This document shows positions 934 to 63,919 of a stretch of DNA of 64,000 nt, piece after piece. The notes under the pieces are model-generated. The model had not been told where the DNA came from and searched no databases. It was given only the letters and a program-made list of their open reading frames with translations. The DNA is taken from NCBI RefSeq assembly GCF_964204645.1, contig NC_134033.1, forward strand, positions 2,996,131-3,060,130, in the 5' to 3' direction. Position 1 is the stretch's first letter. Every line of letters begins with the position of its first letter. The DNA is from Tubulanus polymorphus. Taxonomy: Eukaryota > Animalia > Nemertea. The translations under genes and the position numbers were made by a program.

Positions 934-3900
934 ATGCAGCGAATGAAAGCGTTGTTCGTAGTTTTACTGATCGCTTGCGGAGACTGTATATTTACGCGGG
1001 CTGATCGCGCAAACTCTGTCGAGGAAGCCGCGTCTGTTACGGTCAGTTCATCTTGTAACAACACTCAATTCTCCGTCGATTCTACGTCTGGTTACATCGT
1101 TTCACCGAACTATCCGTCGTTAGTGCGCGGTGTTGAATGTCGTTGGTTCGTCAACAGCTCTTTACCGGGAAGTTTTCTCGTTCAAGTTTACTACGATATC
1201 GAGCCGTCGATATTCTGTAACGAAAACTACCTTCTCGTCGGTGAGTCCGAAAACAAACTCTGCGCTACCGGAAAAAAACGACTAGATATCCGCAGTAACG
1301 ATTTGAATTCGTTGTTGTTTAGGAGTAACGTCGATGGAGCGCGAGGTAGTCGGGTTTATATCATATATCGTTTTGAAGAACAGAGTCGCTTGAAAATCTT
1401 ACACACATGCTACAAACGTGCAGTAAAAGAATTACCAACTCAAACAGGTTATGAATTCAGGATTTCTACCCGGCGATGTAAATTGTTGTTAGAATGGATC
1501 GGGATGCCAGACGGGTTTGCAATGAATTTTACGTTTATACAGATAGATTTTAGATTAAGACCAGGTGAGGATCCGATGAAAACTCGTCCTCAAATTCACG
1601 ACGGATGGAACAGCGCCAGTGAACCTATAGCTCTTATACGAGAACAAACCGGACATCCGCCTTCATCGTTTTATACTAAAACTAATAAAGCACGTATTGA
1701 ATTCATTTCAAGTACAGAGTGGTTTAAGTCACAGTTACTCGTGCAAGTTTACAAAATATCAGATTGGAACATCTCTAACCCGTTAATTCAAGTCTACAAT
1801 AAATCAGGACTGCTCGCTACAATTGATGGAATACCACATATAGTAACTCAGTCTAAACACTTATACTGCTGGTCTATCACAGTCGATGTTCTGCAGTACG
1901 TCGTCTTCAACTGGTCACGTGATCTCGTCTCGTCACCAGGTGTCGTTGGTGTATATACACGGGAAGGGTTACGTATTGTGAGAACTGATATTTTACTCAG
2001 TTTTAACCATCTTAAATCTCTGAGTGTAAAATCAGACGGATTTCTCGTGATTCTGTGCGTTTTAACGACATCGGATTTTTTAAGATCGAATTTGGAAATA
2101 GAGTTTGAAGTGAAATCAATCACAATATCAGACGTCTACATCAACAAGGCAACGTTATTGGTAAGTTTATTAGAGTGATTTGTAAATTAGGTTTGTGTAA
2201 TAGAATCACTGTAAAAGTCTATGATTTTGATGGCGATTTTTACCAGTGAAACTTTACCGAGAAACTTGGAATAACAACGTTATGTGTGACCCAAATTTCA
2301 ATATATTTGGACGCACTTGTTTACGCAGAATATATGATGATTTGTGGAAGAATTTAAGTTAAGTTTCGATTGCAACATTTTGAACTATTATCAAAATATC
2401 GAGGTCGTACAGGGTTTGAAATTGTTGTATTGTAAACGTTCAATGTTGTAATCAATTCTCTTATATTTCAGCATTTATTCACAAACCCAACATCAGTTCA
2501 TCAAATGTTCCCGAGATCAAAGATTACATTGTATCGTGTAACTACATTACAACTAAACTGGAAAGTGAACATCTATGAAGAACAGTTGAAACTAACAGTG
2601 CTATCAGAAAACTGTGATCGAGCTGGTTTTTATATATTTGATGGTAGTAATTTTACAGCTAGACGCTATGGTCCGTATTGTCCCGGTTCATACTACGGTC
2701 GATCTGTCGTCAGCCTGATTACATCAGGTGGATCGGTTACTGTAGTAGCATACGCTTATTACTATAACAATCAGTTAACAGTTGGTGATCCCAACAGGTC
2801 ATATCTTAGATTTGCTCCTACTGATTGTGACGGTTATGTTCTACAGGAAGAAGAACATCGGATCAAAATGACGTCACACTGTCTCGTGATTACACCTGAA
2901 AATCGACGCCTTCGCTTGAAAATTATTCAAATATTATCAGAACACGAATATCAAATTGACCGATGTTTTCTCAAGATGTCAAGGCGATGTGATCAGTTTC
3001 TGAGTTTGAGTAATCAGTTTCTTAATAACAGTCTCGTATTAAACACTGTAGATTTCACAGGTGGGTTTTGGTTCTGGCAGTATCCACTAATAGTTGAACT
3101 ACGTCGTAAATGTCTACGAGTGAAAAAAGCGGATAGTTTTGGATTTGCCGGTTCCCGTCTTCCAGTTACTACTAAAGATCAATGTGGACTCGTGCAGTCA
3201 CCGAACTACCCGGCTTGGGCAGGAGGTACATCAAAATCTATTTCCTATAAATTTGAAAACCCGATAGAACAAAATATATTTCAATATTACAGATTTATTG
3301 TCAAATCTATTGGACTAGTTTCATGTGAAACAAACAATGCCCGTCGAAATGATCCGATCATATTGATGCAGATTATTATTTTCAACCTTTTCCTAAATGG
3401 AAAAATATCTAAAATTATTAGTAACCAACATGAAACTAAAATATGTGAAAATAACGCGGTTCGTGGACTTATATTTCATAGTTTAACAGATAATACTCTG
3501 CGTTTTGAAGTTAATAATCATATCCCGACATTTCAAATACAATACACTTTACACGAGTCGTTACCGATTAAACATTTCGATGATTTCTACTGTAAACAAG
3601 GATTTCTGGATTCCGGAATTTCTTGCATCAAATTCATCAGAGATGAACGTCTGAATTGGGAGAACGCTGAAATATACTGTAGACAGAAGTACGCGGGACA
3701 TCTACTCAGTATCAACTCAGAACAGGAAATGATTTCCATCAAAAGATTATTCGCTACAGAACTTCGCCGAATGGCGTACACATTAAAAGCGCTCATAATG
3801 ATGATTGGATTAAAATGGAAGGTAAGACTAATGTATTCTAATATGAATTAAAATCGAAAGATTTTTAAAGAAGTGATATATTTCATTTTCTTCACGAAAC

Positions 3901-6900
3901 AGAATGATGGTTATTACACGTGGACTGACGGTAAACCATTGAGCTACACAGAGTGGTATAAACCTGTTATTAATGAAACTATACCAGAAGTTATTCGAGG
4001 ATTGATATCTCCGCAAAGAAAACAACCGATAAATGACGTCAATATGCCGTGTACGGCGATGATACTGAATAATCCACGAGGATCGGCGAACTGGGTTCGA
4101 TTCCCGTGTCAAATCGAGGAGACGCACACGACATTCATTTGTGAATCCGAGAGAATCGACATCAAAAACGAACACAATTCAACGATAAACGACGCGAACA
4201 ATTCAACGAATACACACTTAAATAAGACCATAGATCATATAATTCCCGATATTACTTTGATAAATTCAATCTGTCCAAGAGGTTGGGTAACTATTTCCGG
4301 ACGATCTTATCAAATACTAACCGATTGGAAAAACAATCGAGGTTTTAATATTCGGAGTGCTAGAGAAATGTGTCACAGCATCCGCACCGAAATAGCAAAA
4401 ATCGCTAAAATTAACGTGAAAAACTTGGTCAGTGAATTTCAATATCGTCATCAATATGGCGCTATACTGACAATGGACCGCGACGGATTTAAAGTTATCA
4501 AACCACTGGTGACCAGAAATGAAATTACTCGTATTCAATCGGTTAAATGGTTATTGAAACCTTTCGATTATACAAACGATAAAGTGCATTCCGTGTTGTG
4601 TACCTATAATGTAACTGGTGATGAGTTAGCTTCTATAAGCGGTTGTAAATCGTGGCAGTTTGAATGTACCGATTGCAGATGTATCAGCGACCATCGCGTA
4701 TGTGATACCAGACACGACTGTCAACACGGTGAAGATGAACTCGATTGTACGGATATCAATTTACACAGTCAGTTCCGCTGTAACGATGGACAGATTATAT
4801 CGATTAGCAGTTTCTGTGACTTTATGAGAGATTGCGTCGATGGCTCGGATGAGAACTCTTGCTATCATCCACCGTGTTTATCTACGCAATATCGCTGTTC
4901 CAATCACCAATGCATCGATAGTTATAAACGATGTGACGGACTAGCCAACTGTAAAGACGGTTCCGATGAGATCGGATGCACTGGTGAACTTTGTCAGGGG
5001 TTCTCGTGCGCGGACGGTGAATGTATTAGTTCTCAGTTGTATCGGGATGGTGTCGTGGATTGTAGCGGAAGTCTCGAAGAAGACGAATTGGTCACTAATA
5101 TGACAGTGAGACCCGAGGATTTTTGTGATAATGACAATCAATGTTCGACTCGTTTCACAGATCTGTGTAAGGAATCGGATGAGCAAAGATGTTCGTTCAA
5201 TTCTCCTCGCTGTTATTCCCGACACGAAAGGTGTATTTTAGAAAGGATGCCGATTGGTTTCCCGGTATGTAGAAATCTTGAACATATACTCGCGTGTAAT
5301 GACTTCGAATGCGCGGCTGGTACTGTAAAATGTCCGGCATCTTACTGTATACCGATCAGACACGTTTGTGACGGTCGATCCGATTGTCCTAATTCAGAAG
5401 ATGAACGGAACTGCGAGACTTGGTCGTGTCCGGGAATGTTTAAATGTGGCCAGGAAAATCGATGTATTCCCCAATCCGAAGTTTGCGACGGTGTCGTAAA
5501 TTGTAAACATAACTCGGATGACGAGTCATTCTGTAAGGTCACGTGTCCTGAGCGTTGTAATTGCCGGGGTCATTTCATCGATTGCGAAAATGCTCTTTTA
5601 TCAGATATTACTGGTCGTTTTATAGAATCAACTCGGGTTTTGATTTTGTCGAATAACCGAGTCGTATTTAACGAGTCGACGTTCAACTCTTTCATTTATC
5701 TTCGTTTTCTCGATATTTCGGGCAATAATTTGTCTTACATCGTTCCAAACGCGTTTTCTAATCTAAACAATCTATACATATTAGACCTTACACACAACCG
5801 CATAAAATCATTAACTGCTAATACATTCGCAGGTTTGATCGGTTTAAAACAACTATTTCTTATCGGAAATCCGCTGCAACATTTAGAATACGGTAGTTTT
5901 CGAGGTCTGACGTCACTTACTGTTCTTGATCTTCACGGACTTTCTATATCGGTTCTCGGTGAAAATGTATTTAAAGGTTTATCCGCATTACAGTCGTTAA
6001 ATATCAGCAGTAACAGAATCCATTACATTTCGACATTTGCTTTTTCTGGATTGGTTCGACTTGAAATTCTAGATCTTGTCAAAAATGCCGAAGTGATATT
6101 TGTTAAAAGAAACGTTCTTGGCGATCTTACATCATTGAAATACCTCGCTTCGGATGCTTACAAATTTTGCTGCATGGCACCGAATGTTGACCGATGTCTT
6201 CCCGAAGCTGATCAATTTTCCACCTGTTCTGACCTGATGGGTAACGCTGTACTGAGAGCCATCATCTGGATGATCGCAACTTTCAGTTTTCTCGCTAACA
6301 GTATCGTTATTGTATTTCGCGTTCAAGCTTTGCGGATGGAATCCTCCGGAACACGTAACACATCTTCAGATATCTTCATCATAAATATTGCCGGTTGTGA
6401 TTTTCTGATGTCGGTCTATTTGTTTTTGATCGCGGGAGCTGACTACGTGTTCAAAGGCGTTTATTATCTGAATTCTGAAACCTGGACGGATAGCTCATTA
6501 TGTCGTCTCGCCGGGGTTATAGTCACCGTTTCGTGCGAAGGTTCCTTAACTTTTCTCTTAATTCTAACGCGTCAGAGATATTCAAATATCGTCAACCCGT
6601 TTTCCAGAAGTCCTATTATAACTCCGAAATACGTTACCGGTATTTGTTGCATTTGTTGGCTCGTTATAAGCACAGTTTCTATTCTACCGCTGTCATCGTC
6701 GTCTTACTTCGGAGACAATTTTTACGGTACAACCGGAGTTTGTTTGCCTATGAATTTACTGACGATCGACGTCAATGGCTGGCACTATTCATTCGCTATT
6801 TTTGCCTTTTTTAATGCGGCCATATTGGCTACGATAATGACGACGTACGCTCAGATGTATAGACTCGTATCTGGAAGTAGGTCGGGTTCGGGTAGAGCCG

Positions 6901-7160
6901 ATCCTACCGAACTGGTTTTAGCTCGAAGGAGTTTAGTAATCAATCTTTGTAATCTATTTTGCTGGCTACCGATAATAATCGTCCAGTTTTGCGCCGTATT
7001 TTCGGTCGAGATACCGAACCAGGTGGCCGCTTGGCTGGCCGTTCTATTTTTACCGATCAACTCGTCTCTGAATCCGCTTCTTTATACAATACTGACGATC
7101 GATATGAAATCAATTAGAACGAGATATAATCGTCAACAAAAAAGTAGAACACTTCAGTAG
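934..7160 (+). CDS. GRL101-like CUB/CTLD/LDLa/LRR rhodopsin-type GPCR, copy 1 (intact, ~1944 aa); exons 934-2160, 2472-3821, 3903-7160
   Basis: Introns 2161-2471 (GTAAGT..TTTCAG) and 3822-3902 (GTAAGA..AAACAG), both phase 0, join the three ORFs in frame. Intron 2 splicing restores a CTLD motif (IGLKWK|NDGYYTWTDGKPLSYTEW). Domains seen: signal peptide MQRMKALFVVLLIACGDC; CUB motifs (SGYIVSPNYP..CRW, CGLVQSPNYP); LDLa repeats (CDG..DC.DGSDE..C); LRRs; hinge KFCC..CLPEADQFSTCSDLMG; TM6 CWLP; TM7 PINSSLNPLLY. Confidence 0.93.
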
Positions 7161-9680: not shown

Positions 9681-9683
9681 TGA

Positions 9684-10578: not shown

Positions 10579-12791
10579 GCACAGTTATTTTTATTTATTC
10601 AAATCATCAAGAGTAATAAATAGAGGCTGCTTTAACATATCTCTCAATTCTAAATATCGTATATATCTAAATATCGTCAACCCGTTTTCTAGAAGTTCGA
10701 TTATAACACCGAAATACGTTATCGGTATTTGCTGCATTTGTTGGCTCGTTATGAGCACGGTTTCTATTCTACCACTGTCATCGTCGTCTTACTTGGTTGG
10801 TGTTGGTTCTCCGTGTCAGCACCGAACAAGTCCTCACCCGCCACAATCAGATATCGATGCCCTTCACTTAGCTTCAACTCAGTTATTATATTGACTGCAG
10901 AGTGTGAATTGTCGAAACAGATGTTGACGAAGTGTTTTACAGAGACGCAGAATATTTTGAGGTAAAGATAGAAAATATTATCGAATATTATCACAAACTG
11001 AACGCAGTTCGGGAGCGACTGTAAAATTTTATAGAGAAATAATTGCACTTGATTATAAACACGATATATTGAAACACGTCTAAATTTAGAAACCGCGGTA
11101 ATTACAGCGAAACCGAGAACAGATGAAAGTTTCACAAATACGAGACTGGCGCCAGTTTGATGGGCGGATTTTTTTACAAAATAATTGGACTCGATCAATT
11201 CGTCAACTTCTGACATTTGCGAATTCGTCATTACTTTGCAGCGTCTCTTATGAGAAATGTCGTGCGAACTTGGAAATAGTTAGAAATGTGTTTGTTTTGA
11301 AGCGTGAATTGTGTTCAATATGCAGCGAATGAAAGCGTTGTTCGTAGTTTTACTGATCGCTTGCGGAGACTGTATATTTACGCGGGCTGATCGCGCGAAC
11401 TCTGTCGAGGAAGCCGCGTCTGTTACAGTCAGTTCATCTTGTAACAACACTCAATACTCCGTCGATTCTACGTCTGGTTACATCGTTTCACCGAACTATC
11501 CGTCGTTAGTGCGCGGTGTTGAATGTCGTTGGTTCGTCAACAGCTCTTTACCGGGAAGTTTTCTCGTTCAAGTTTACCACGACATCGAGCCGTCGATATT
11601 CTGTAACGAAAACTACCTTCTCGTCGGTGAGTCCGATAACAAACTCTGCGCTACCGGAAAAAAACGACTAGATATGCGCAGTAACGATTTGATTTCGTTG
11701 TTGTTTAGGAGTAACTTCGATGGAGCGCGAGGTAGTCGGGTATATATCATATATCGTTTTGAAGAACAGAGTCGCTTGAAAATCGTACATACATGTTACA
11801 AACATGCAGTAAAAGAATTACCAACTCAAACCGGTTATGAATTCAGGATTGATACCCGGCGATGTAAATTGTTGTTACAATGGATCGGCATGCCAGACGG
11901 GTTTGCAATGAATTTAACGTTTATACAGATAGATTTCAGATTAAGACCAGGTAAGGATCCGATGAAAACTCGTCCTCAAATTTACGACGGATGGAACAGC
12001 ACCAGTGAACCTATAGCTCTTATACGAGAACAAACCGGACATCCACCTTCATCGTTTTATACTAAAACTAATAAAGCACGCATTGAAATTGAAAGAAGTT
12101 TGAAGTCGCAGTTACTCGTGCAAGTTTACAAAATATCAGATTGGAACATCTCTAACCCGTTAATTCAAGTCTATAATAAATCAGGACTGCTCACTACAAT
12201 TGATGGAATACCACATATAGTAACTCAGTCTAAACACTTATACTGCTGGTCTATCGCAGTCGATGTTCTGCAGTACGTCGTCTTCAACTGGACACGTGAT
12301 CTCGTCTCGTCACCAGGTGTCGTTGGTGTATATAAACAGGAAGGGTTACGTATTGTGAGAACTGATATTTTACTCAGTTTTAACCATCTTAAATCTCTGA
12401 GTGTAAAATCAGACGGATTTCTCGTGATTCTGTGCGTTTTAACGACATCGGATTTTGTAAGATCGAATTTGAAAATAGAAGTTAAAGTGAAATCATTAAC
12501 AATATCAGACGTCTACGTCAATAAGCGAAGGACACGGGTAAGTTTATTACAGTGATTTGTAAATTGGGTTCGTGTAATAGAATCATTGTAATAGGGTATT
12601 TGAAATTGTTGTATTGTTCAATGTGATAAAACTACGCAATAAATCGAAAAACGAATGAAATATAAGTCCCACAATCACAGGATCGATAAAGATTTTAAAA
12701 CATCAAAACTATCAAAATTTATTAAAAACCTCGAATTTTCGGTTTTATGCTAAAAACCATTTTCAAGAGTGACTAAAAGTATGGCATTACA

Positions 12792-13130
12792 CATCCTCCC
12801 TCTGCAGGGACTCGAACCTGATGGCATCGCTACACTCAGCCACGGCACGAACCCCTGCCACAGTAGACCGGGTGCGCAGATACATGCGCAGCTTTCCGAA
12901 CGAAAACTGGCGGCACCAATCAGATTGCTCGTTGTATAAACGTTGAGGCAAATTTCAAGGAAGAACTATAAATGGGAAAACCCGGGCTAAAATAAAACGG
13001 GATTTCTGATTGGCTAAAAATCACATCATCTGAACTGCGCATGTATCTGCGAACACGGTCGATTATGGCAGGGTTTCGTGCTGTGGAAATCTCGATGCCA
13101 TCAGGTTCGAATCCCTGCCGGGGGAGGATG
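12792..13130. mobile_element. MITE with ~100-bp imperfect TIRs and 9-bp TSD (Mutator/MULE-type) in intron 1 of copy 2
   Basis: TSD GGCATTACA at 12783-12791 and 13131-13139; termini CATCCTCCC...GGGAGGATG; TIR similarity extends to GCAGATACATGCGCAG. Confidence 0.85.
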
Positions 13131-14087
13131 GGCATTACACAGTACATATATTAAGCAAGAACGACACACACAATAGCACATAAAAACTAGGTGATATTGA
13201 CCTGAGAGGAAATGTATAGGGACAAAAGTTTATTATGGGCGAGGATTGTAAACGTAAAAATTGATTGTAAACGTTCAATGCTGTTATCAATTTCCTGATA
13301 TTTCAGAATGGTGGAGGCTTTGCATCAATAATAGCTGTTCACTTGTTCCCGAGATCAAAGAATACATTGTATCGTGTAACTACATTTCAACTAAACTGGA
13401 AAGTGAACATCTATGAAAAACAGTTGAAACTAACAGTGCTATCAGAAACCTGTGATCGTGCTGGTTTTTATATATTTGATGGTAGTAATTTCACAGCTAG
13501 ACGCTATGGTCCGTATTGTCCTGGTTCATACTACGGTCGATCTGTCGTCAGCCTGATTACAACAGGTGGACCGGTTACTGTAGTAGCATACGCTTATTAC
13601 TATAACAATCAGTTAACAGTTGGTGATCCTGTCTGGTCATATCTTATATTTGCTCCTACTGATTGTGATGGTTATGTTCTACGGGAAGAACAACGTCTGG
13701 TCAATATGACGTCACACTGTCTCGTGATTACACCTGAAAATCGACGCCTTCGCTTGAAAAATATTCACATATTATCAGAACACGAATATCAAATTGACCG
13801 ATGTTTTATTAAGATTTCATGGTCATGTGATCAGTTTCTGGGTTTCAGTAATCAGTTTCTTAATAACAGTCTCGTATTAAACACTGCAGATTTCACAGTT
13901 AATGAGTTCGGGTTCTGGCAGGAACCACTAATAGTTAAACTACGTCGTAAATGTCTAGGAGTCAAAACAGGTGAAACTAATTTTGATTCCCTTATCCAAA
14001 GTGCGACTAAAGATAAATGTGGACTCGTGCAGTCACGGAACTACCCGGGTCGGGCAGCCAATAGATTGAAACTTATTTCCTATAAAT

Positions 14088-17000
14088 AACACGTTCCCAA
14101 ATGTTTTGATACTTTCTCAGTTTGTATCAAAAATATTGCCAATTTCCAGTCATTGAGTCCTGAAAAATGATAAATTTACAGCGCAAAATCGTACAAACGT
14201 GTCAATTATACTTCTAAACACTTTATTTGCGGACCAGTTTATGAATTGAGCGTGGGCCATAGAGCGCTATATCCGCCTGTGATCTCGACTTTCAATTTAT
14301 TACGTAAGCTATTCGTGAACAAAATGCGGCCGGCGCACAATAGAAACTTCGCTCTATGTATTCTTTCATTACCGCCGACAAAGAGGACCGATATTTCGCA
14401 AATTGGATTCGGGAGGTTTAAACCTCCCAAGGTCAAATCACTAAAATTGTGACCTTCGTGGAGATTATCTAAAACGCCGATGGTAATCAAATTTAGCAGA
14501 ACTTTTTACCCAAACGTTTAATGGTTTGAAAATCTTTCAATGGCATTCCTAAGTATTTGATGAAAGTTGAGAAATCATAAGATATTCATATAACCATGGA
14601 CTCTAAAACCTAAATCGTTTAAGAGTCCCTGGTATAAAAAAAAAACTTTGCATAACGAAGAAGCAAAAATTCGAATCTGATTCATCTGTTTGGAATTGAT
14701 TCTTATGAAATGGAAACAAATGCGTGAGCACTACTCATTGATTCGTTCATTATTGTACAATATGTTTCATTTGTTGACCGTAAGACGTTGACATTATGTC
14801 AATTTCATTCAATTTACTTTGCGGGTTTACAACGGCTATTTCACTGGTTCTGCGTGATGAGATAATTCTGATTAAAGTTATTGTATTAATTTCTATATGT
14901 ATATACGTAATGATACTCTTTCTGAATAAAGGATGCACGTTATTCGAATCCCCACCATTGTTCTCTACAATGTACGTTAATCAAACTCACGATAAAACCA
15001 GAGCCAAAACCATGGACTCAAAAACGAAGAATCCGTGGTCAAACATACAATTCTAATTTCCCCGTTAGTTCACTGATGCCGTCAGTTTCTATCGAATGCA
15101 AGGATTCTAGCCAATCAGAGAGGCGCATGCAAACATCCATTGGCATGTAAGTTATAGTACAACTTAGACAATAATCAAGGTGCGAGCCAATGTCAGTAAC
15201 TAGAATATGTTCTTTCATCAAATATAAATAACTCAGCAGTAGTCAGTTAGTTGAGTTTGTTTGACTTGTTTTGTATTTCATCAATAAATCTATTTCATTC
15301 TATTTTAAAGTACAAACTAAACGCTTGAATTGCTTATAACACGACCAGGTATGAATTAGAATAGATTGGCTTAATATTTCGAATGCAAATTTGGCGATTA
15401 AGCAATCGGAAATTCGAAGTGCTTGAGAAATTTTTCAATACGCCCATTACTTCGAATAGCGATAAGTTCATTGACACATGTGACCATTGTTTTGTTACTT
15501 TCGATAGCGATTCGAATAAGCTATGCGACAGCTAACGACAGCACAATCGCAATATCAACAGAAGTTCATTTTATCCTACATGATGAGGCTAAATTCAGTG
15601 AAATCGATCGTGTTCTGAAATATATATTTTCCTGGATACATTTTGTTTATTGTAGCTATTCTATGCGGTTTATACATTAACCTGCTATAACATATTGACC
15701 GTTTTCAAGAACCCAAAAATTACAATTTTCTGGGAATCTGTTTTTTCCAAAAACAACCCAAACCCGAAATTGTGTACAGTTAGTACGCAGCGTATATAAT
15801 GTCGGATTAGAGAATATTGAAAAAACTTAGAAAAAGTTCAGTGAAGGAAAATAAGCTCAGCAGTGACAAATTGTCATTTCATCTCCTTCACGTGATTAAT
15901 TGATGTCCAAATATGTTCTACCGTGAAAACTCTGCATTTAGCGTCAAACGAATTTTTGTATACGTATCTCAGGATGCATGCTCTTCAAAAAGGTAGCCTA
16001 TTAGGAAAAAACTTATCCGGTAAAATCCTAATTTTTCCTAAACGATATTCCAACTATTATTTTGTTAATTATTCAACTATCATCACTAACTGGGTAAGTT
16101 AGTTGAACTTACATAAAGATATATCATTAGGGACACTTCAATTTCACACCATTCAATATCATAAGGGAACAAAATTCTTTGAAACTTGGTTAATGGTAGT
16201 TCTTAAGACTAGGTTTTGTTTCCGGAATTTACTAAATGTACCAATTCTAATAATTCACTCATTGAAGCTTCTATACATCAGAAGCGAAAGCTCGTGCGTC
16301 GAAATAAATAGTTAACCTTTAAAGTACTACTCGTCTCTTCATTTAAATTCAAATAATATAAGTCTTTATTGATTCTTTTTTTGTTGGAATATGCATAACT
16401 TTTTCTGGGCAAATTTCTATATTCTGTCAAGTCATGGACGTTTTAGAGTCCATGGTCAAGGTATTTTGGCTATAACGAATATAACTAACTCCCTGGGGCA
16501 ACGATGTGGCTGATGAAATGATCTCTCCCATTGTAATCCCACCATTTAATTACTCATTGTATAACAACTCTCACAATTAAGCCTCGGACTCTTCAACGAA
16601 TTATGAGTGCATGCTTTAGTATAGGCTCTGATATAGAGCATATTGTCTTGATTTAGAACATGTATGCAAAAACTCTAGGCTGCAAAGAAATACGTATTCA
16701 GCGGCTCTAATCGAGTTAAATCTTTCGTGATAGATTAACACAGAAAGGCGGCACCCAATCGCTGCTTATTGACATTAGGCACAAGTCACTGTTATGTTCA
16801 TTAGTAAAACTAATATAGAATTACAAGTGAGGAGGGAAAATGTATAAATTGAATTTATAAATGAATTTATAAGAATTTAGCATGCATCGGAGTGCACTTA
16901 AATTGGATTATTACAAAATAACTCACTTCAAAATTTATGATATTGTTTCATTGATATTTATTACTTTAAAGCGATTCACTTTAAGAACTTTGGTCAACAA

Positions 17001-20000
17001 TAAGTCTGACCTGCAAATCAAATCATCGGGAGACAAAATACTGTTTCAAAAAATCATATTGCTAATACATTCCTAATCTTAACCTTTCGCCATAAACCTA
17101 CTGGATTTAGGGCCTGGGGTAAAATCTAGGTAAAATCCTCACTTGGCGATTTTTCAAGCACATTTGAAAGCACAATATTTATTCAAACATATTCATCCAC
17201 AATACAACTGCAATATATTTAACTGTGCATTGATCTCTTTTGATGAAATAAATCTTTAAATAAATTCATAGAATAAATGAAATTAATGAACTTTTTATTC
17301 ATACTATCTTTTCATATTCTTATTCATACTATATTTTAATTCGAACTAAATAACTCTTTTTAACTTGTGGTATAGTATGCTTATGATATGGATTCGATTT
17401 ACGTATCAATATTTTCATGTTGACGGGGGCCTGATGATGGCTAATAGCATTAGCCGAAACATTGCTCGTAGAACATTTGATTTTTAGCTGAATTCATTGT
17501 GGGATTTGTCTCGTTATTCACCATACACGGATATTGTGTATTTTCTTCTCATTTTCATGTTGGTTTTGAACAACTTAAATTTTGCGATTCTAATCCCTTA
17601 TTAACTTTAGATGACAGTAATACCTTCAATTTACATGTAAAATATGATCACTGCTGAAAGTGTAATAAGGAATATATATTTACTCCAGTGACAATATTTT
17701 GATTCAAAGATTTAATTCAATCATCTAGTCCGAGTCTGTATGGTAAAACCTCTGGCTAACCAAGAGCTAACCGAATACCGACAATAGAAGGTGGTCGCTT
17801 AAAAATTAGTTAATTTACGCAACAGGAATCTATCTTGATTTCAAGGGCACTTCAATTAATCGTTTCAATAGTGACCACTGTAAATTAGCCAGTAGTTTCA
17901 ACGACCGAATTCAATCAACCGATTCGTATCCTAAGAATGAGAATTGTATCTAACCACAGTAGTTATTCCTCATCAAACGTTCGTTCATCATATTATACAT
18001 CTATACATCATTACTATCATCTTCAGTTAATAGAAGTGCAATAAAATCTTGAATCTATGAGTTGAGTTTTTTTGAACATAATAAATTGTGTTGATTTTAT
18101 GTTAGTTAAATCAAATATTGGGAATATTTTACCGGGGGATTTTTACTTTGGGGATAATAAGCTAAATTATTTTATATCATCGGTTTTCATTAAGAAAAAA
18201 AAACAACTATTAATCTTAACTACACTTATATTCCTTTTGGAACATTAAGATTCTTTCATTGAATTTAATATGTTATTTCGTACATAGTTCATCACAGTGC
18301 GTCATTCACGCTTAAATGTACAAAACTTCTTTACAGAGTTCAAAATATAAACCAACAATCTCATCTCAAGCATGTACTAGCGCTGACGCTATGGGATAAA
18401 ACCAAGTCTCGATTCATTGCCTAAAATGTGGGTACATTCATTCAAATCAGGACTAAAATACGCTTATATGAATATCTTGTATGATATCATTTTACATTAC
18501 GGGTGTCTCATAGGCCTGGTTTTACTTGTACATTGTCATCAATTGATTGAACATCCCAAGTAACTTTTTTATTTACTTATGGCTTAATCACTGGTACTCA
18601 ATAGCTAGTCGGCTATAGAGAGACTAACCCGATAAAATTCTATTAACCGTTCGTCCAGAGTCGAACACTCGCGCGTTAATTCGCAACGATTTTAAAGAAA
18701 GAAAATGATTGCATGAAATCTACTTTTCGTATCAATCGGCGTCCAATCTCTTAAACCATCCTAAACACAGTAGTGTAGTAGTTTGTGTCTATTTGCTTTT
18801 GCTGATGTCATTTAACATAACAATGGAAATGTATTCGTTTATTTGGAAATTATATGAAGATATGGAGTAATCATGTGACAAATCAAATTGTTACTGCAAG
18901 GCAAAACATAGCGCACTTCAGATATATGATATGGCCTTAAAGACTTTTCATATATTAACAGTCCAGTTTAACGTCTATTGATATGAATGGTCCAGTTTTG
19001 ATATGACTGTCGCAACAGTTGGAATAAAACCTATGAAATCTAGGGGCATTTATCTCATGAAATTTAGATTTGAGATAATTGTATTGTATTGTATGAGGAT
19101 TAAACATTTCAATGGCTGGTGATTATTTGTGATGAAGTAATCAGTGAGATGGACTGTGATTGAGGCACTCGGGTCAGATAATATTTTTAGATAAAACAGT
19201 GCATTTGTTAAAGCAGAACACATGATTTTAAACTATATATAAGTAGCTAAACCGTTAATTTTCATTCCTAACTTTTCATCACTCCCGATTATCAAAAATA
19301 ATTCAACAGTTTGATTAACGGATAGTTGCAGTTAACAACATTTCTATCTGATAGAGAAGGTATACAGGTATACAGAGGAACAAGAAAAGAACATCCAACT
19401 AGACACTGAAAAATCTTTATTCGGGTTTTTTACCTGGGGCCTTTACCTTGGGGTATATTTAACAAGGGGATTTTTACTGAAAGGGACCTTTACGGGGCGA
19501 GTTTTTACCCGATCACATCGATTATTGAATGACATGTTCGATAAAATCATGACAAAAACTGGTATCACTGGTACAATTTGCTAATTTTCGCTGTTCGGGT
19601 GGTTCTGTAGACTATTGGCTATACCGTTGGTAACTGACTAGCTATTTGTATCACTGATCGGACTGTGAAAATATAGCTTTGACAAAACCACAACGAGAAA
19701 TGAATCAAATGCAATATTTTACTCGAAAACGAGCTTAACCACGGAATCAGTAACGTTTTTTTACAGTCCATGGCTGAAATGACGCTATTGAAAAAATCAA
19801 TGAGAAATACTGCCTCCGATTTTTATGACGAAAATATAGGAATGAATTCTGAACAGAATCAAATCAGGTTGTTCTAATTGGTATTGTGTATACATTTCAT
19901 TTATTAGATATTTCACGTAATTCGTGTAATTAGGAAAAACTCGATCCAATAATTGGTTTTTCTTTCGGTTTTACGTAATTTACAACTTACCAAATATGGA

Positions 20001-20460
20001 CTACATGGTTTGACATTAAAACCAGCGAGCATTATGGTATCAAGTTCAACCAAAATTGATAACGATCGGCCTTTCGTAGAATCTCCCTGAAGGTCACAAT
20101 TTTAGTAAATTGACCTTGGGAGGTTTAAACCTCCCGAATCCAATTAGCAAAATATCGGTCCTCTATGTCGGCGACAATAAAAGTACCCTGCGCGTAACTT
20201 TCTATTGTGCGCCTGCCGCGTTTTGGGCACGAGTAGCTTACGTAATCTTAATTGAAAGTTGAGATCACAGGCAGATATTGAGGTCTATGGCCCACACATA
20301 ACATCATAAATTGGTCAGGAAATAAAGTGTTTTGAGGTATAGATGACACGTTTGTACGATTTTACACTGTAAATTTATCATTTTTCAGGACTTAAGGACC
20401 AAAAATCGGCAATATTTTTGATACAAACTGAGAAAGTATCAAAACATTTGAGAACGCGTT
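14088..20460. mobile_element. 6.37-kb non-autonomous DNA transposon with ~400-bp imperfect TIRs and 4-bp AAAT TSD (Sola1-like by TSD)
   Basis: Left end AACACGTTCCCAAATGTTTTGATACTTTCTCAG vs right end ..CTGAGAAAGTATCAAAACATTTGAGAACGCGTT; TSD AAAT at 14084-14087 and 20461-20464; no transposase ORF inside. The superfamily call is inference from the AWWT TSD. Confidence 0.88.
17423..17550 (+). mobile_element. 128-bp Penelope-like insertion carrying a minimal hammerhead ribozyme motif, 12-bp TSD
   Basis: TSD ATTTTCATGTTG at 17411-17422 and 17551-17562; core CTGATGA-T-GGCTAAT(AGC)ATTAGCC-GAAAC at 17431-17460. Confidence 0.7.
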
Positions 20461-23400: not shown

Positions 23401-25189
23401 TCGAATGTTGATCGATGTCTTCCCGAAGCTGATCAATTTTCGACCTGCTCTGACCTGATGGGTAACGCTGTACTGAGAGCCATCATCTGGATGATCGCAA
23501 CTTTCAGTTTTCTCGCTAACAGTATCGTTATTGCATTTCGAGTTCAAGCTTTGCGGATGGAATCCACCGGAACACGTAACACATCTTCAGATATCTTCAT
23601 CATAAATATTGCCGGTTGTGATTTTCTGATGTCGGTCTATTTGTTTTTGATCGCAGGAGCTGACCACGTGTTCAAAGGCGTTTATTATCTGAATTCTGAA
23701 ACCTGGACGGATAGCTCATTATGTCGTCTCGCCGGGGTTATTGTCGCCGTTTCCTGCGAAGGTTCCTTGACTTTTCTCTTAATTCTAAGGCGTCAGAGAT
23801 ATTCAAATATCGTCAACCCGTTTTCTAGAAGTCCGATTATAACTCCGAAATACGTTATCGGTTTTTGCTGCATTTGTTGGCTCGTTATAAGTACAGTTTC
23901 TATTCTACCGCTGTCATCGTCGTCTTACTTCGGAGACAATTTTTACGGTACAACCGGAGTTTGTTTGCCTATGAATTTACTGACGATCGACGTCAATGGC
24001 TGGCACTATTCATTCGCTATTTTTGCCTTGTTTAATGCGGCCATATTGGCTACGATAATGACGACGTACGCCCAGATGTATAGACTCGTATCTGGAAGTA
24101 GGTCGGGCTCGGGTAGAGCCGATCCTACCGAACTGGTTTTAGCTCGAAGGAGTTTAGTAATCAATCTTTGTAATCTATTTTGCTGGCTACCGATAATAAT
24201 CGTTCAGTTTTGCGCCGTATTTTCGGTCGAGATACCGAACCAGGTGGCCGCTTGGCTGGCCGTTCTATTTTTACCGATCAACTCGTCTCTGAATCCGCTT
24301 CTTTATACAATACTAACAATCGATATGAAATCTATTCGTGAACGCAATAAACGACGACTAGGATTGACGACATCCAGTAAATAAAGAATAGTTTGACAGG
24401 AGTCACTTTATAATGTTTGCCTATCTATAAATCGGGTTTGAACCTCGAAATCCTAAAACTTGGTTTCGAGTTCGTTTGGAGTCACGTGACCGCATCAGAT
24501 GAACGAATACTATGAGATAAGTTTACAGCAGAGCAAAATTACCCCGATTATCATAACTACCGTTAATTTTGGTTTTTAGTTATATCTAACTCACAACTTG
24601 CTGGAATTGGTAGAAATTTTACCGGAGTCGTGTTTTCCGAATTACTAACTCGTAAAAACTTTTAAAATTATTTCTAACTGAGAAGGATTAATATTACACT
24701 TAATATATAATACTTTAACATCTCTATCCCCAAGATTCTTGCGTAAATATAAGCAGGTTTGATTTGAGCGAGAGGGAATCATCCGTTTGAAACTAGGATT
24801 TAGGGTTTCATGGATATAAAATTCCCCTAATTTGAAGGCGTTATATTTCTAAATAGTAATCTACGATTCAACCCTCAAACGTTTGAATAATCTATGAATA
24901 TTCGTCATTTAGTTCCGAAAGAAGAATTTAGTATAACAATGATTTGAGTCACTCGATAAAAATAAAACGGAGTAAAAATTCATGTCTCCCGTGAGGACGC
25001 TGATAGTTAGATTTATCAATATAACTGTTTCTACCACGAGAGACGAAGCACCATATACCAGAAATGTAACATCATAATGCATAAACACAGTTGATTGGGG
25101 AATATTGAAATATGTTCTTTTTCACTGACCGTTTATGAATTATAGTTCTTTGATATATTTACGTAAAACCTAATATTTATATTTTAAAC

Positions 25190-56204: not shown

Positions 56205-56434
56205 CTACAATATAATAACATTGTAAACAATGTAACATCATTCTAGATGCTAGGCTAGGGAATGATAGAGAGAGGGAGCAGGGCCAGGGAGTTTCACACA
56301 GTAACTAGGCTTAAGAATAGAAATCCGATTCCCTTTGTACTAGCATGTCTCCAGCCTCGATTGCCTACGTACCTATTGATAACTATTAAAATGAGACATC
56401 AATTTCTAGCATTTCTTCCAAGTCACAACTCTAC

Positions 56435-56514
56435 TTGGTTCATCTTGGTTTATCTGGGTTCGTCCTGGTTCATCCTGGTTTATTGGGGTTCGTCCTGGTT
56501 CATCTTGGTCCATC
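56435..56514. repeat. 10-bp tandem repeat (GGTTCATCCT)n
   Basis: ~8 degenerate units. Confidence 0.85.
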
Positions 56515-57684: not shown

Positions 57685-60600
57685 ATGCAGCGAATGAAAG
57701 CGTTGTTCGTAGTTTTACTGATCGCTTGCGGAGACTGTATATTTACGCGGGCTGATCGCGCAAACTCTGTCGAGGAAGCCGCGTCTGTTACAGTCAGTTC
57801 ATCTTGTAACAACACTCAATACTCCGTCGATTCTACGTCTGGTTACATCGTTTCACCGAACTATCCGTCGTTAGTTCGCGGTGTTGAATGTCGTTGGTTC
57901 GTCAACAGCTCTTTACCGGGAAGTTTTCTCGTTCAAGTTTACTACGACATCGAGCCGTCGATATTCTGTAACGAAAATTACCTTCTCGTCGGTGAGTCCG
58001 ACAACAAACTCTGCGCTACCGGAAAAAAACAACAAGATATCCGCAGTAACGATTTGATTTCGTTGTTTTTTAAGAGTAACGTCGATGGAGCGCGAGGTAG
58101 TCGGGTTTATATTATATATCGTTTTGAAGAACAGAGTCGTTTGAAAATTGTACATAAATGCTCAAAACGTGCAGTAAACGAATTACCAACTCAAACAGGT
58201 TATAAATTCACAATTTCTACTCGGCGATGTAAATTGTTGTTTGAATGGATCGAGATGCCAGACAGGTTTGCAATGAATTTAACGTTTATAGAGATAGATT
58301 TCAGATTAAGACCAGGTGAGGATCCGATGAAAACTCGTCCTCAAATTTACGACGGATGGAACAGCACCAGTGAACCTATAGCTCTTATACGAGAACAAAC
58401 CGGACATCCGCCTTCATCGTTTTATACTAAAACTAATAAAGCACGTATTGAATTCATTTCAAATAAACTGTCGTTTAAGTCACAGTTACTCGTGCAAGTT
58501 TACCAAATATCAGATTGGAACATCTCTAACCCGTTAATTCAAGTCTACAATAAATCAGGACTGCTCACTACAATTGATGGAATACCACATATAGTAACTC
58601 AGTCTAAACACTTATACTGCTGGTCTATCACAGTCGATGTTCTGCAGTACGTCGTCTTCAACTGGACACGTGATCTCGTCTCGTCATCAGGTGTCGTTGG
58701 TGTATATAAACAGGAAGGATTACGTATTGTGAGAACTGATATTTTACTCAGTTTTAACCATCTTAATTCCCTGAGTGTAAAATCAGACGGATTTCTCGTG
58801 ATTCTGTGCGTTTTAACGACATCGGATTTCTCAAGATCGAATTTGAAAATAGAATTTAAAGCGAAATCAATGACAATATCAGACGTCTACGTCAACAAAC
58901 CAAGGATATCGGTAAGTGTATTATAATGATTTGTAAGTTTGGATCGTGTAATAAAATCATTGTAATTACATATATTTTGATGGCGATTTTGACCAGTGAA
59001 ACTTTACCGAGAAACTTGGAATAATAACGCAATGTGACCCAAAACACATGTTGTTTGCGCAGACACTAATTATGATGGGTGTTGAGAATTTGGGTTAAGT
59101 TTGGAACATCTTGAACTGTTATTGATATATTTATCTAATTCTAAGTCGTAAGGAGTTTAGAATTGTCGTATTGTAAACGTTCAATGTTGTAATCGATTCT
59201 CTTATATTTCAGAATGATGTGGGCGCGAATGGTTTAACAGCTAATCAATTGATCCCGAGATCAAAGAATACATTGTATCGTGTAACTACATTACAACTAA
59301 ACTGGAAAGTGAACATCTACGAAGAACGGTTGAAACTAACAGTGCTATCAGAAAACTGTGATCGAGCTGGTTTTTATATATTTGATGGTAGTAATTTCAC
59401 AGCTAGACGCTATGGTCCGTATTGTCCTGGTTCATACTACGGTCGATCTGTCGTCAGCCTGATTACATCAGGTGGACCGGTTACTGTAGTAGCATACGCT
59501 TATTACTATAACAATCAGTTAACAGATGGTGATCCTTTCAGATCATCTCTTCGATTTGCTCCTACTGATTGTGACGGTTACGTTCTACAGGATGAAGAAC
59601 GTCAGATCAATATGACGTCACACTGTCTCGTGATTACACCTGAAAATCGACGCCTTCGCTCGAAAAATATTCACATATTATCAGAACACGAATATCAAAT
59701 TGATAAATGTTTTCTCAAGATGTCTTGGCGATGTGATCAGTTTCTGAGTTTGAGTAATCAGTTTCTTAATAACAGTCTCGTATTAAACACTGTAGATTTC
59801 ACAGTCGATGGGTTTGGATTCTGGCAGTATCCACTAATAGTTAAACTACGTCGTAAATGTCTAGGAGTGAAAAAAGCGGTTAGTTTTGGATTTGACAGCT
59901 CATTTCTTCCAGTTACTACTAAAGATAAATGTGGACTAGTGCAGTCACCGAACTACCCGGGTTCGGCAGGAAGTACATCAAAGTCGATTTCATATAGATT
60001 TGAAAACCCGATACAACAAAATATATTTCAATATTACAGATTTATTGTGAAATTTATTGGATCAGTATCATGTGAAACAGACAGATTCGGTCGAAAAGAT
60101 CCGATCATTTTCATACAATCAATCAATTACGAACCCTTTCTTAATGGGAAATATTTCAAAACCATTGAAACTCAACATGAAACTTTAATATGTGAAAATA
60201 ACGCGGTTCGTGGACTTATATTTTATAGTATATCAGATAATACTTTACGTTTTGAAGTAAACAATAGAATTCCGACATTTCAAATACAATACACTTTACA
60301 CGAGTCGTTACCGATTAAACATTTCGATGATTTCTACTGTAAACAAGGATTTCAGGATTCCGGAATTTCTTGCATCAAATTCATCAGAGATGAACGTCTG
60401 AATTGGGAAAACGCTGAAATATACTGTAGACAGAGGTACGCGGGACATCTACTCAGTATCAACTCAGAACAGGAAATGATTTCAATCAAAAGATTATTCG
60501 CTACAAAACTTTTCCGAATGGCGTACACATTAAAAGCGCTCATAATGTTGATTGGATTAAAATGGAAGGTAAGACTAATGTATTCAAATATTAATTAAAA

Positions 60601-63600
60601 TAGAAAGATTTATAAAGAAGTGATATATTTCATTTTCTTCACGAAACAGAATGATGGTTATTACACGTGGACTGACGGTAAACCATTGAGCTACACAGAG
60701 TGGTATAAACCTGTTATTAATGAAACGATACCAGAAGTTATTCGAGGATTGATATCTCCGCTAAGAAAACAACCGATAAATGACGTGAATATGCCGTGTA
60801 CGGCGATGATACTGAATAATCCACGAGGATCGGCGAACTGGGTTCGATTCCCGTGTCAAATCGAGGAGACGCACACGACATTCATTTGTGAATCCGAGAG
60901 AATCGACATCAAAAACAAACACAATTCAACGATAAACGACGCGAACAATTCAACAAATACAGAACTAAATAAAACCATAGATCAAATGATTCCCGATATT
61001 ACTTTGATTAATTCAACCTGTCCAAGAGGTTGGGTAACTATTTTCGGACAATGTTATCAAATACAAACCGACTGGAAAAACAATCGAGGTTTGAATATTC
61101 GGAGTGCTAGAAAAATGTGTCACAGCATCCGCGCCGAAATAGTAAGACTCACTTCAAATACTGAAAGCGATATGAACAATTTGGTCAGCGAATTTCAATA
61201 TCGACATCAATATGGCGCTATACTGACAATGGACCGCGACGGATTTAAAGTTATCAAACCACTGGTGACCAGAAATGAAATTACGTATATTCAATCGGTT
61301 AAATGGATATTAAAACCTTTCGATGATACAAAAGATAAAGCGCATTCCGTGTTATGTACCTATAATGTAACTGGTGAAGAGTTGGCTTCTATAAGCGGTT
61401 GTAAATCGTGGCAGTTTGAATGTAACGATCAAAGATGTATCAGCGACCATCGTGTATGTGATACCATACACGACTGTCAACACGGTGAAGATGAACTCAA
61501 TTGTACGGATATCAATTTACACAGTCAGTTCCGCTGTAACGATGGACAGGTTATATCGATTAGCGGTTTCTGCGACTTTATGAGAGATTGCGTCGATGGA
61601 TCAGATGAGAACTCGTGCTATCATCCACCGTGTTTATCTACGCGATATCGCTGTTCCAATCACCAATGTATCGATAGTTATAAACGATGTGACGGACTAG
61701 CCAACTGTAAAGACGGTTCCGATGAGATCGGATGCACTGCCGAACTTTGTCAGGGTTTCTCGTGCGGGGACGGTGAATGTATTAGTTCTCAGTTGTATCG
61801 GGATGGTGTCGTGGATTGTAGCGGAAGTCTCGAAGAAGACGAACTGGTCACTAATATGACATTGAATCCCGATGTTTACTGTAATAATGGCAATCACTGT
61901 ACGACTCGTTTCACAGATCTGTGTAAGGAATCGGATGAACAAAGATGTTCGTTCAATTCTCCTCGCTGTTATTCCCGACACGAAAGGTGTATTTTAGAAA
62001 GGATGCCGATTGGTTTCCCGGTATGTAGAAATCTTGAACATATACTCGCGTGTAATGACTTCGAATGCGCGGCTGGTACTGTAAAATGTCCGGCATCTTA
62101 CTGTATACCGATCAGACACGTTTGTGACGGTCGATCCGATTGTCCTAATTCAGAAGATGAACGAAACTGCGAGACTTGGTCGTGTCCGGGAATGTTTAAA
62201 TGTGGCAGGGAGAATCGATGTATTCCGCAATCTGAAGTTTGCGACGGTGTCGTTAATTGTAAACATAACTCAGATGACGAGTCATACTGTAAGGTCACGT
62301 GTCCTGAACGTTGTAATTGCCGGGGTCATTTCATCGATTGTGAAAATGCTCTTTTATCAGATATTACTGGTCGTTTTATACAATCAACTCGGGTTTTGAT
62401 TTTGTCGAATAACCGAGTCGTATTTAACGTGTCGACGTTCAACTCTTTCATTTATCTTCGTTTTCTCGATATTTCGGACAATAATTTGTCTTACATCGTT
62501 CCAAACGCGTTTTCTAGTCTAAACAATCTATACACATTAGACCTAACTCACAACCGATTAACATCATTATCTGCTAATACATTCGCAGGTTTGATCGGTT
62601 TAAAACAACTATTTCTTATCGGAAATCCGCTGCAACATTTAGAAGACGGTAGTTTTCGAGGTCTGACGTCACTAACTAATCTTGATCTTCACGGACTTTC
62701 TATATCGGTTCTCGGTGAAAATGTATTTAAAGGTTTATCCGCATTACAGTCGTTAAATATCAGCAGTAACAAAATACATTATATTTCTAGCTATGCTTTT
62801 TCGGGATTGGTTCGACTTGAAATTTTAGACCTCGTCAACAATTTTGAAGTAATATCCGTACAAAGAAACGTTCTTGGCGATCTTACATCATTGAAATACC
62901 TCGCTTCGGATGCTTACAAATTTTGCTGCATGGCATCGAATGTTGATCGATGTCTTCCCGAAGCTGATCAATTTTCGACCTGCTCTGACCTGATGGGTAA
63001 CGCTGTACTGAGAGCCATCATCTGGATGATCGCAACTTTCAGTTTTCTCGCTAACAGTATCGTTATTGCATTTCGAGTTCAAGCTTTGCGGATGGAATCC
63101 ACCGGAACACGTAACACATCTTCAGATATCTTCATCATAAATATTGCCGGTTGTGATTTTCTGATGTCGGTCTATTTGTTTTTGATCGCAGGAGCTGACC
63201 ACGTGTTCAAAGGCGTTTATTATCTGAATTCTGAAACCTGGACGGATAGCTCATTATGTCGTCTCGCCGGGGTTATTGTCGCCGTTTCCTGCGAAGGTTC
63301 CTTGACTTTTCTCTTAATTCTAACGCGTCAGAGATATTCAAATATCGTCAACCCGTTTTCCAGAAGTCCGATTATAACTCCGAAATACGTTATCGGTATT
63401 TGCAGCATTTGTTGGCTCGTTATAAGCACAGTTTCTATTCTACCGCTGTCATCGTCGTCTTACTTCGGAGACAATTTTTACGGTACAACCGGAGTTTGTT
63501 TGCCTATGAATTTACTGACGATCGACGTCAATGGCTGGCACTATTCATTCGCTATTTTTGCCTTGTTTAATGCGGCCGTATTGGCTACGATAATGACGAC

Positions 63601-63919
63601 GTACGCTCAGATGTATAGACTCGTATCTGGGAGTAGGTCGGGTTCGGGAAGAGCTGATCCTACCGAACTTGTTTTGGCTCGAAGGAGTTTAGTAATCAAT
63701 CTTTGTAATTTATTTTGCTGGCTACCGATAATAATCGTTCAGTTTTGCGCCGTATTTTCGGTCGAGATACCGAACCAGGTGGCCGCTTGGCTGGCCGTTC
63801 TATTTTTACCGATCAACTCGTCTCTGAATCCGCTTCTTTATACAATTCTAACTATCGATATGAAATCTATTCGCGAACGCAATAAACGACGACTAGGATT
63901 GACGACATCCAGTAAATAA
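57685..63919 (+). CDS. GRL101-like CUB/CTLD/LDLa/LRR GPCR, copy 5 (intact, ~1950 aa); exons 57685-58911, 59213-60568, 60650-63919
   Basis: Phase-0 GT-AG introns 58912-59212 and 60569-60649; same domain motifs as copy 1. Confidence 0.93.

What the first reader, a model, noticed from the sequence alone, without database searches (positions are those of the whole stretch)
934..63919. Tandem array of giant multi-sensor GPCRs (CUB - C-type lectin - LDLa - LRR - 7TM), a candidate diversified recognition-receptor system
Seen: five paralogs; after splicing, each intact copy is ~1,945 aa with a ~1,600-aa ectodomain in only three exons. Established: GRL101/LGR type C receptors combine LDLa repeats, LRRs and a rhodopsin 7TM. 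Here ~1,100 aa of CUB-like and CTLD modules are added N-terminally, stacking four recognition folds on one GPCR. Inference: a lineage-specific, rapidly turning-over family (3 intact, 2 TE-disrupted in 64 kb) acting in immune, allorecognition, gamete or chemosensory recognition. I do not know of a functional description of this architecture but cannot verify novelty.
Basis: partly seen in the sequence, partly recalled or inferred. Interest (0 to 1): 0.85.

Follow-up and report, generated by a model that had tools for sequence, protein, structure and literature searches.

The report
Expanded giant GRL101-like receptor family
This stretch holds five tandem copies (three intact) of a gene for a very large cell-surface receptor, one of about 300 copies in this worm genome whose outer CUB-like modules vary while the signalling end stays nearly constant; it looks like a built-in sensor repertoire, of a receptor type already known to multiply in snails.

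Summary
Observation confirmed: five paralogs, three intact three-exon genes (1,944, 1,946, 1,950 aa), one split by a 6.4-kb DNA transposon, one cut off by an LTR element. Exon 2/3 splicing is strongly supported without RNA: the intron splits one C-type lectin domain into complementary halves and sits at the same place in unrelated animals. No RNA run covered the locus. The genome holds about 300 copies (307 and 331 motif sites), monophyletic and separate from its single true GRL101 orthologue. The architecture is not lineage-specific: over 25 database proteins from annelids, a nemertean, oyster, echinoderms, hemichordates and amphioxus carry CUB+CTL+LDLa+LRR+7TM. A 12-gene CTL-LDL-LRR GRL101 cluster (Biomphalaria resistance locus) and 29-132-gene tandem expansions (apple snails, tentacle-expressed) are published. 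What this adds is scale and pattern: purifying selection on lectin, LDLa, LRR and 7TM (dN/dS 0.12-0.30), hypervariable patches in distal CUB-like modules, gene conversion, and site-level positive selection that exceeded a small recombination-aware null. Best reading: a germline repertoire of ectodomain-sensing LGR type C2 receptors for large ligands; immune versus contact-chemosensory is unresolved. The scan has already reported this family on many other windows of this genome. New variant of a known kind.

The parts
934..2160 (+). Copy A exon 1 (409 aa): signal peptide, clear CUB (aa 38-148), CUB-like module 2 (149-275), weak module 3
   Evidence: Pfam CUB E 0.001; hhalign to a CUB profile seeded from module 1: E 5e-22 (circular), 3e-5, 0.009; model residues 151-280 match CUB structures at Z 8.0-8.5, rmsd 3.0-3.4 A for six of the top seven, ~100 aligned; donor at 2160
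2472..3821 (+). Copy A exon 2 (450 aa): CUB-like modules 4 and 6, unassigned module 5, first half of the C-type lectin domain; most variable exon
   Evidence: hhalign E 9e-5 and 4e-5; tail matches CTLD profile positions 2-59, E 8e-11; site tests
3903..7160 (+). Copy A exon 3 (1,085 aa): second half of the CTLD, a degenerate second CTLD-like stretch, 5 canonical plus 1-2 degenerate LDLa, about 6-7 LRRs, RXFP-type hinge, rhodopsin 7TM
   Evidence: Head matches CTLD profile 65-133, E 5e-18; Pfam; best PDB match RXFP1 7TMW E 1e-74
11320..24384 (+). Copy B: exon 1 11320-12537, intron 1 enlarged to 769 nt, exon 2 split by a transposon (13307-14087 / 20461-21033), exon 3 21115-24384 intact
14088..20460 (.). 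Non-autonomous DNA transposon in copy B exon 2: ~425-bp inverted ends 85% alike, 4-bp target duplication, no ORF of 100 aa
27374..33609 (+). Copy C, intact: exons 27374-28597, 28911-30260, 30343-33609 (1,946 aa)
36418..37309 (+). Copy D: exon 1 fragment only (about 297 codons)
   Evidence: four other places in the genome show the same truncation
37310..41362 (+). LTR element after copy D: LTRs 37310-37866 and 40807-41362, 98.8% alike, primer-site-like and purine-rich stretches inside, no long internal ORF, no matching target duplication
57685..63919 (+). Copy E, intact: exons 57685-58911, 59213-60568, 60650-63919 (1,950 aa)

Best explanation
These are functional, germline-encoded members of a roughly 300-gene family of LGR type C2 (GRL101-like, not GRL101-orthologous) GPCRs that evolves by tandem duplication, loss and gene conversion. 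The membrane-distal CUB-like modules carry the variable surfaces and bind large ligands (proteins, glycoproteins, cell or mucus surfaces). The conserved CTLD-LDLa-LRR stalk and hinge pass the binding event to a near-constant 7TM, probably by a hinge/tethered-agonist mechanism as in RXFP1 and the glycoprotein-hormone receptors, so that many ligands feed one G-protein output. Shown: gene structure, copy number, domain homologies, the pattern of selection and recombination. Inferred: expression, ligand class, activation mechanism. Within this reading I put non-self/immune recognition and contact chemosensation (prey, mate, mucus cues) at about equal odds.
For: Open frames and phase-0 GT-AG sites are kept in paralogs down to ~60% identity. 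The CTLD halves are complementary across intron 2 and the same intron occurs in two unrelated animals. 307/331 motif sites against 0/1 in controls. dN/dS 0.12-0.30 in CTLD, LDLa, LRR and 7TM, 0.39-0.82 in the distal modules. M1a/M2a LRT 25-71 in modules 2, 4, 5, 6 against 0-4 in CUB1, module 3, CTLD, LDLa and the second half of the 7TM; real values exceed every finite replicate of a recombination null. PHI p=0.001 in all exons and shared conversion tracts. The hinge Cys motif, R3.50 and NPxxY are kept in all 20 copies checked. Published parallels: PMC12297450, PMC6573481, PMC13403566.
Against: No RNA evidence. In the most variable block (exon 2 codons 281-320) dS is as raised as dN (0.5-0.75 vs 0.2-0.3), which fits old variants spared from homogenisation as well as selection. 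Several selected sites lie next to indels. The null had only 10-12 replicates and module 2 only just exceeds it (25.1 vs 22.6). LRR and the first half of the 7TM also gave LRT 22.5 and 12.0 on two sites each, and no null was run for them. Structure models were low-confidence. The CTLD lacks EPN/QPD/WND motifs, so sugar binding is not supported.
Confidence: 0.6

Rival explanations
1. Largely neutral birth-and-death: a repeat-prone locus amplifies a receptor with one (endogenous, e.g. insulin-like) ligand. The distal modules are tolerant spacers, and the variable patches are loops under relaxed constraint that escape gene conversion.
For: Domain-average dN/dS is below 1 everywhere. dS rises with dN in the patches. 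Frequent breakage (2 of 5 in the window; stops or frameshifts in several fetched paralogs) and segmental re-duplication of a broken copy. Type C2 LGRs have been suggested to bind insulin-like peptides (PMC6267866).
Against: Hundreds of 6-kb genes on at least ten contigs, most of those scored with open frames. Site tests exceed the recombination null. The same loops vary in both the C9 clade and the distant clades.
Confidence: 0.25
2. Exons 1-2 and exon 3 make separate products (a secreted CUB protein and a shorter GRL101-like receptor), or the ectodomain is shed and acts alone.
For: No spliced read was seen. Shedding cannot be excluded from sequence.
Against: Exon 2 ends and exon 3 begins inside one CTLD. 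Neither exon 2 nor exon 3 starts with a signal peptide. In three paralogs intron 2 has no stop and keeps the frame. Contiguous database proteins show the same order.
Confidence: 0.05
3. Gamete or allorecognition receptors (sperm-egg or self/non-self between individuals), with CUB arrays acting as in egg-coat receptors.
For: CUB arrays and lectin domains are common in gamete-recognition proteins (own knowledge). Some GRL101-like genes show sex-biased expression in starfish (PMC6267866).
Against: About 300 dispersed paralogs fit a broad repertoire better than a one-locus matching system. No expression data.
Confidence: 0.1

Closest known systems
Biomphalaria sudanica SudRes2 GRL101-like cluster (PMC12297450)
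   Same: Tandem cluster of CTL-LDLa-LRR-7TM GRL101-like genes with copy-number and truncation variation; proposed recognition role.
   Different: 12 genes in 440 kb against ~300 here; no CUB modules reported there; their link is genetic association with schistosome resistance.
Apple snail (Ampullariidae) GRL101 expansion (PMC6573481)
   Same: Lineage-specific tandem expansion of GRL101-like GPCRs.
   Different: 29-132 genes, expressed in tentacles and labial palps; ectodomain architecture and selection pattern are not given in the passages read.
Lymnaea GRL101 / LGR type C2 (PMC11863921; orphan)
   Same: Multiple LDLa + LRR + RXFP-like hinge + rhodopsin 7TM.
   Different: The window's genes are ~38% identical in the 7TM and fall outside the GRL101 orthologue clade; the genome has its own orthologue at C8:16.03 Mb. 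They add ~1,100 aa of CUB-like and CTLD modules.
Unnamed CUB-CTL-LDLa-LRR-7TM database proteins (Lineus P0020, Dimorphilus P0016, Paralvinella P0027, Ostrea P0022, Lytechinus P0042, Branchiostoma P0007; ENA contigs L031, L032)
   Same: Same domain order; L031 and L032 also share the intron inside the CTLD and a ~840-950-aa CUB array.
   Different: Only 33-38% identical over LDLa-7TM; the distal modules here are so diverged that no homologue was found for exon 2; I found no paper describing them.
Human RXFP1 (PDB 7TMW)
   Same: Best solved relative (E 1e-74): LRR end, hinge Cys motif and 7TM align throughout.
   Different: One LDLa, single copy, relaxin ligand; no CUB or CTLD.

Membership tests
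LGR type C (RXFP/GRL101-type) | Rhodopsin 7TM closest to RXFP, with R3.50 and NPxxY | tested here: met
   7tm_1 E 5e-23; RXFP1 best PDB hit; motifs kept, D/E3.49 replaced by Q or H
LGR type C (RXFP/GRL101-type) | LRR ectodomain plus Cys hinge before TM1 | tested here: met
   LRR_8 E 2e-28; hinge aligns to RXFP1 and LGR4
LGR type C (RXFP/GRL101-type) | LDLa module(s) N-terminal to the LRRs | tested here: met
   6 Pfam stretches
LGR type C2 / GRL101-like | Multiple LDLa with few LRRs | tested here: met
   5 canonical plus 1-2 degenerate LDLa, about 6-7 LRRs
GRL101 orthologues (Lymnaea, Lineus, Ptychodera, arthropods) | 7TM groups with Lymnaea GRL101 | tested here: not met
   Separate long-stem clade, SH-aLRT 100, against the orthologue clade at 99 (quick tree); true orthologue elsewhere in the genome at 74%/62%
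LGR type C1 (relaxin receptors) | One or two LDLa and a relaxin/ILP ligand | tested here: not met
   5 or more LDLa; ligand not testable; no C1 receptor was in the tree
Biomphalaria SudRes2-type CTL-GRL101 | CTLD N-terminal to the LDLa array, tandem cluster | tested here: met
Biomphalaria SudRes2-type CTL-GRL101 | Common descent with the SudRes2 genes | not tested
   SudRes2 sequences were not among the hits
Sugar-binding C-type lectins | EPN/QPD and WND Ca2+/sugar motifs | tested here: not met
   None in copy A; lectin-like fold only
Diversified immune or chemosensory receptor repertoires | Many paralogs, with variability and positive selection focused on ligand-facing parts | tested here: met
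   own implementation, small null, 14-16 C9-clade sequences per exon
Diversified immune or chemosensory receptor repertoires | Expression in haemocytes, epithelia or sensory cells; copy-specific ligands | not testable with these tools
   No RNA run holds the locus

The most novel reading that the evidence does not exclude
A ~300-member GPCR repertoire in which specificity sits in hypervariable loops of membrane-distal CUB-like modules, reshuffled between copies by gene conversion, and each variant binds a different foreign macromolecule and signals through a common 7TM: a diversified pattern-recognition system built on G-protein signalling rather than TIR, ITAM or kinase modules.
Probability: 0.25. 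Interest if true: 0.8.

Novelty: new variant of a known kind. Interest (0 to 1): 0.45.

Why it matters
GRL101-like receptors are orphans that keep turning up as expanded families in snails, with competing chemosensory and immune readings. A ~300-copy, three-exon family with near-identical signalling ends and sharply localised variable patches gives natural matched pairs for ligand mapping, and would show whether a GPCR family can hold its specificity in a distal ectodomain. If immune, it bears on the Biomphalaria schistosome-resistance locus. The domain architecture itself is not new.

Tried and rejected
RNA support: the only RNA-like run laid no contig; the three holders behave as DNA (introns covered, none of the listed joints matches the predicted introns). 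AlphaFold of exon 2 failed (pLDDT 30) and of exon 1 was usable only for residues 151-274; Foldseek gave nothing at E<=0.001. A homologue search with exon 2 plus the CTLD region found nothing; exon 1 hit only generic multi-CUB proteins through its first CUB. The careful tree did not finish; the quick tree is used. Rejected: assembly artefact, lineage-specific architecture, GRL101 orthology, sugar-binding lectin. Paper searches found no description of CUB-bearing GRL101-like receptors, but the library lacks most subscription papers.
Full report
Observation. Six-frame translation and self-BLAST show five + strand paralogs, 90-95% alike, at about 0.9, 11.3, 27.4, 36.4 and 57.7 kb. Copy B has exon 2 split by a 6,373-bp element (14088-20460) with ~425-bp inverted ends and a 4-bp target duplication; both exon pieces and exon 3 are stop-free. 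Copy D is the first ~297 codons of exon 1 followed by a 4-kb LTR element (LTRs 98.8% alike, no coding capacity seen, no matching target duplication), and the rest of the gene is missing. The same truncation occurs at four other places, so broken copies are re-duplicated in blocks.

Is the splice model right? No RNA was available: three runs holding the locus behave as DNA and the one RNA-like run laid nothing. Those DNA runs do show hundreds of distinct contigs at 90-99% identity, which argues against an assembly artefact. Indirect support is strong. The exon 2 tail matches positions 2-59 of a CTLD profile (E 8e-11) and the exon 3 head positions 65-133 (E 5e-18), so intron 2 cuts one domain in two. 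Two unrelated animal contigs have a phase-0 intron at the same point of the CTLD, preceded by a single 835-956-aa CUB-bearing exon that corresponds in size to exons 1+2. In three paralogs intron 2 has no stop and keeps the frame. The three-block layout holds in paralogs only ~60% identical. The exon 1-2 join is the less directly supported one: it rests on conserved splice sites, phase and the single-exon state elsewhere.

Anatomy. Exon 1 has a signal peptide and a clear CUB domain (Pfam E 1e-3 to 8e-5; many multi-CUB hits). Module 2 is CUB-like by profile (E 3e-5) and by structure: the confident part of the model (151-280) has CUB domains as its seven best matches, Z 8.0-8.5. Modules 4 and 6 in exon 2 are CUB-like by profile (E 9e-5, 4e-5), module 3 weakly (E 0.009), module 5 is unassigned. 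Then come the CTLD, which lacks EPN/QPD/WND, a degenerate second CTLD-like stretch (E 2e-4 over 39 columns), five canonical plus one or two degenerate LDLa, about 6-7 LRRs, a hinge and a 7TM whose best solved relative is RXFP1 (E 1e-74). The hinge motif, R3.50 and NPxxY are conserved across 20 copies.

Family size and origin. A motif at the start of exon 3 occurs 307 times and a TM7 motif 331 times in the 268-Mb genome (controls 0 and 1), typically ~3.1 kb apart, in clusters on C3-C6, C8-C12 and others. At least 42 copies are 89-100% identical to copy A in exon 3. At roughly 10 kb per unit the family would fill about 1% of the genome (inference). In a 7TM tree, 11 copies from five clusters form one clade on a long stem, apart from the GRL101 orthologue clade of Lymnaea, Lineus, Ptychodera, a tardigrade and arthropods (quick tree, deeper placement unresolved, long stem). 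The genome's own GRL101 orthologue lies on C8 and is 74% identical to Lineus and 62% to Lymnaea, consistent with, but not proof of, the ribbon-worm origin stated in earlier scan notes.

Evolutionary pattern. Among C9-clade copies, dN/dS is 0.12-0.30 for the CTLD, LDLa, LRR and 7TM, 0.42 for the degenerate second CTLD, and 0.39-0.82 for the distal modules. Variation sits in short patches, e.g. exon 1 codons 155-180 and 258-266 and exon 2 codons 1-16, 103-113, 195-204, 248-255 and 279-322. All exons show recombination (PHI p=0.001), and pairs share long identical tracts while differing elsewhere. My own M1a/M2a test gave LRT 25, 56, 29 and 71 for modules 2, 4, 5 and 6 (3-13% of sites, omega 3.7-7.5), against 0-4 for CUB1, module 3, both CTLD parts, LDLa and the second half of the 7TM; LRR gave 22.5 and the first half of the 7TM 12.0, each on two sites. 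Simulating no selection with block-wise recombination gave maximum finite LRTs of 22.6, 28.4, 10.3 and 20.4 in 10-12 replicates (one replicate failed numerically), so recombination inflates the test but did not reproduce the values for modules 4-6; module 2 is borderline. The largest variable block has dS of 0.5-0.75, so its variants are old and have been spared from homogenisation. Retention by selection and passive escape from conversion both predict that.

How it most likely works. Small-molecule chemoreceptors vary in the 7TM pocket (own knowledge). Here the pocket is nearly constant and variation lies about 1,000 residues away, so the ligands are probably large. I infer binding by distal CUB-like loops, a conserved CTLD-LDLa-LRR stalk, and activation through the hinge as in RXFP1 and glycoprotein-hormone receptors (mechanism from own knowledge; motif conservation shown). 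Confidence 0.6 for a diversified sensor repertoire, with immune and contact-chemosensory roles about equally likely; 0.25 for largely neutral amplification; 0.1 for gamete or allorecognition; 0.05 for separate products.

Comparison with what is known. More than 25 of the 120 listed homologues carry CUB, Lectin_C, LDLa, LRR and 7tm_1 together, from Lineus, Dimorphilus, Paralvinella, Ostrea, many echinoderms, Ptychodera, Saccoglossus and Branchiostoma. The architecture is therefore old and widespread, though I found no paper that describes the CUB-bearing form. PMC12297450 describes 12 tandem CTL-LDL-LRR GRL101-like genes in a Biomphalaria schistosome-resistance region. PMC6573481 reports 29-132 tandem GRL101 genes in apple snails, expressed in tentacles and palps; PMC13403566 and PMC6267866 report tentacle expression in triton snail and starfish. 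PMC11863921 defines type C2 as GRL101-type orphans. PMC11886862 reports 1,000-2,350 class-A GPCRs in two nemerteans, with no mention of LRR or LDL domains. The genes qualify as LGR type C2-like but not as GRL101 orthologues.

Verdict. Real, well-formed and large, but a variant of a known, repeatedly expanded receptor type, and already noted by this scan on many other windows of the genome. The scale and the variable-outside, constant-inside pattern are the parts worth following. Interest 0.45.

Noticed in passing
window 56029-56304, minus strand: A frame with an RCC1 repeat (Pfam RCC1 E 1e-6, above cut-off), probably one exon or remnant of an RCC1-like gene lying between receptor copies D and E.
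   Followed up: partly
window 367-401, 10632-10794, 26607-26811, 35713-35876: A 35-207-bp piece of the receptor's own TM3-TM4 coding region (87-95% alike) sits about 550 bp upstream of the start codon of four copies, and upstream of some other C9 paralogs. Probably a relic of the founding tandem duplication, now part of the repeat unit's promoter region.
   Followed up: partly
L021, L022, L023 (C9:2.85-2.93 Mb) and C6:21.32 Mb: Intron 2 (72-81 nt) is stop-free and in frame, so exon 2 and exon 3 form one open frame of 1,461-1,608 codons; intron retention would insert 24-27 residues into the CTLD.
   Followed up: partly
window 36418-41362 and C9:3.09, 4.03, 4.07 Mb, C22:0.13 Mb: The exon-1-truncated copy recurs five times with the same 304-codon open frame, which points to multi-gene segmental duplications after the LTR insertion.
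   Followed up: no
window 9645-10043, minus strand: Short frame that resembles a decayed LINE reverse-transcriptase region by eye; no Pfam hit.
   Followed up: partly
G000 C1, C3-C7, C9, C10 (e.g. C6:11.22 Mb, C7:19.45 Mb, C1:8.14 Mb, C9:4.2-4.8 Mb and 15.7-16.3 Mb): Further LGR type C-like 7TM genes in long open frames (530-1,140 codons), some apparently outside this family, including RXFP-like candidates at 45-49% to GRL101 and other C9 clusters.
   Followed up: no
P0007 (Branchiostoma, 2,234 aa): A database relative is annotated with kinase and SRCR domains in addition to CUB-CTL-LDLa-LRR-7TM; a GPCR-kinase fusion or a gene-model merge.
   Followed up: no
L031, L032 and P0001-P0010 (ENA long-read assemblies): Unnamed animals carry their own small families of the same two-exon CUB-CTL/LDLa-LRR-7TM gene, forming a separate clade, so parallel expansions probably exist elsewhere.
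   Followed up: partly
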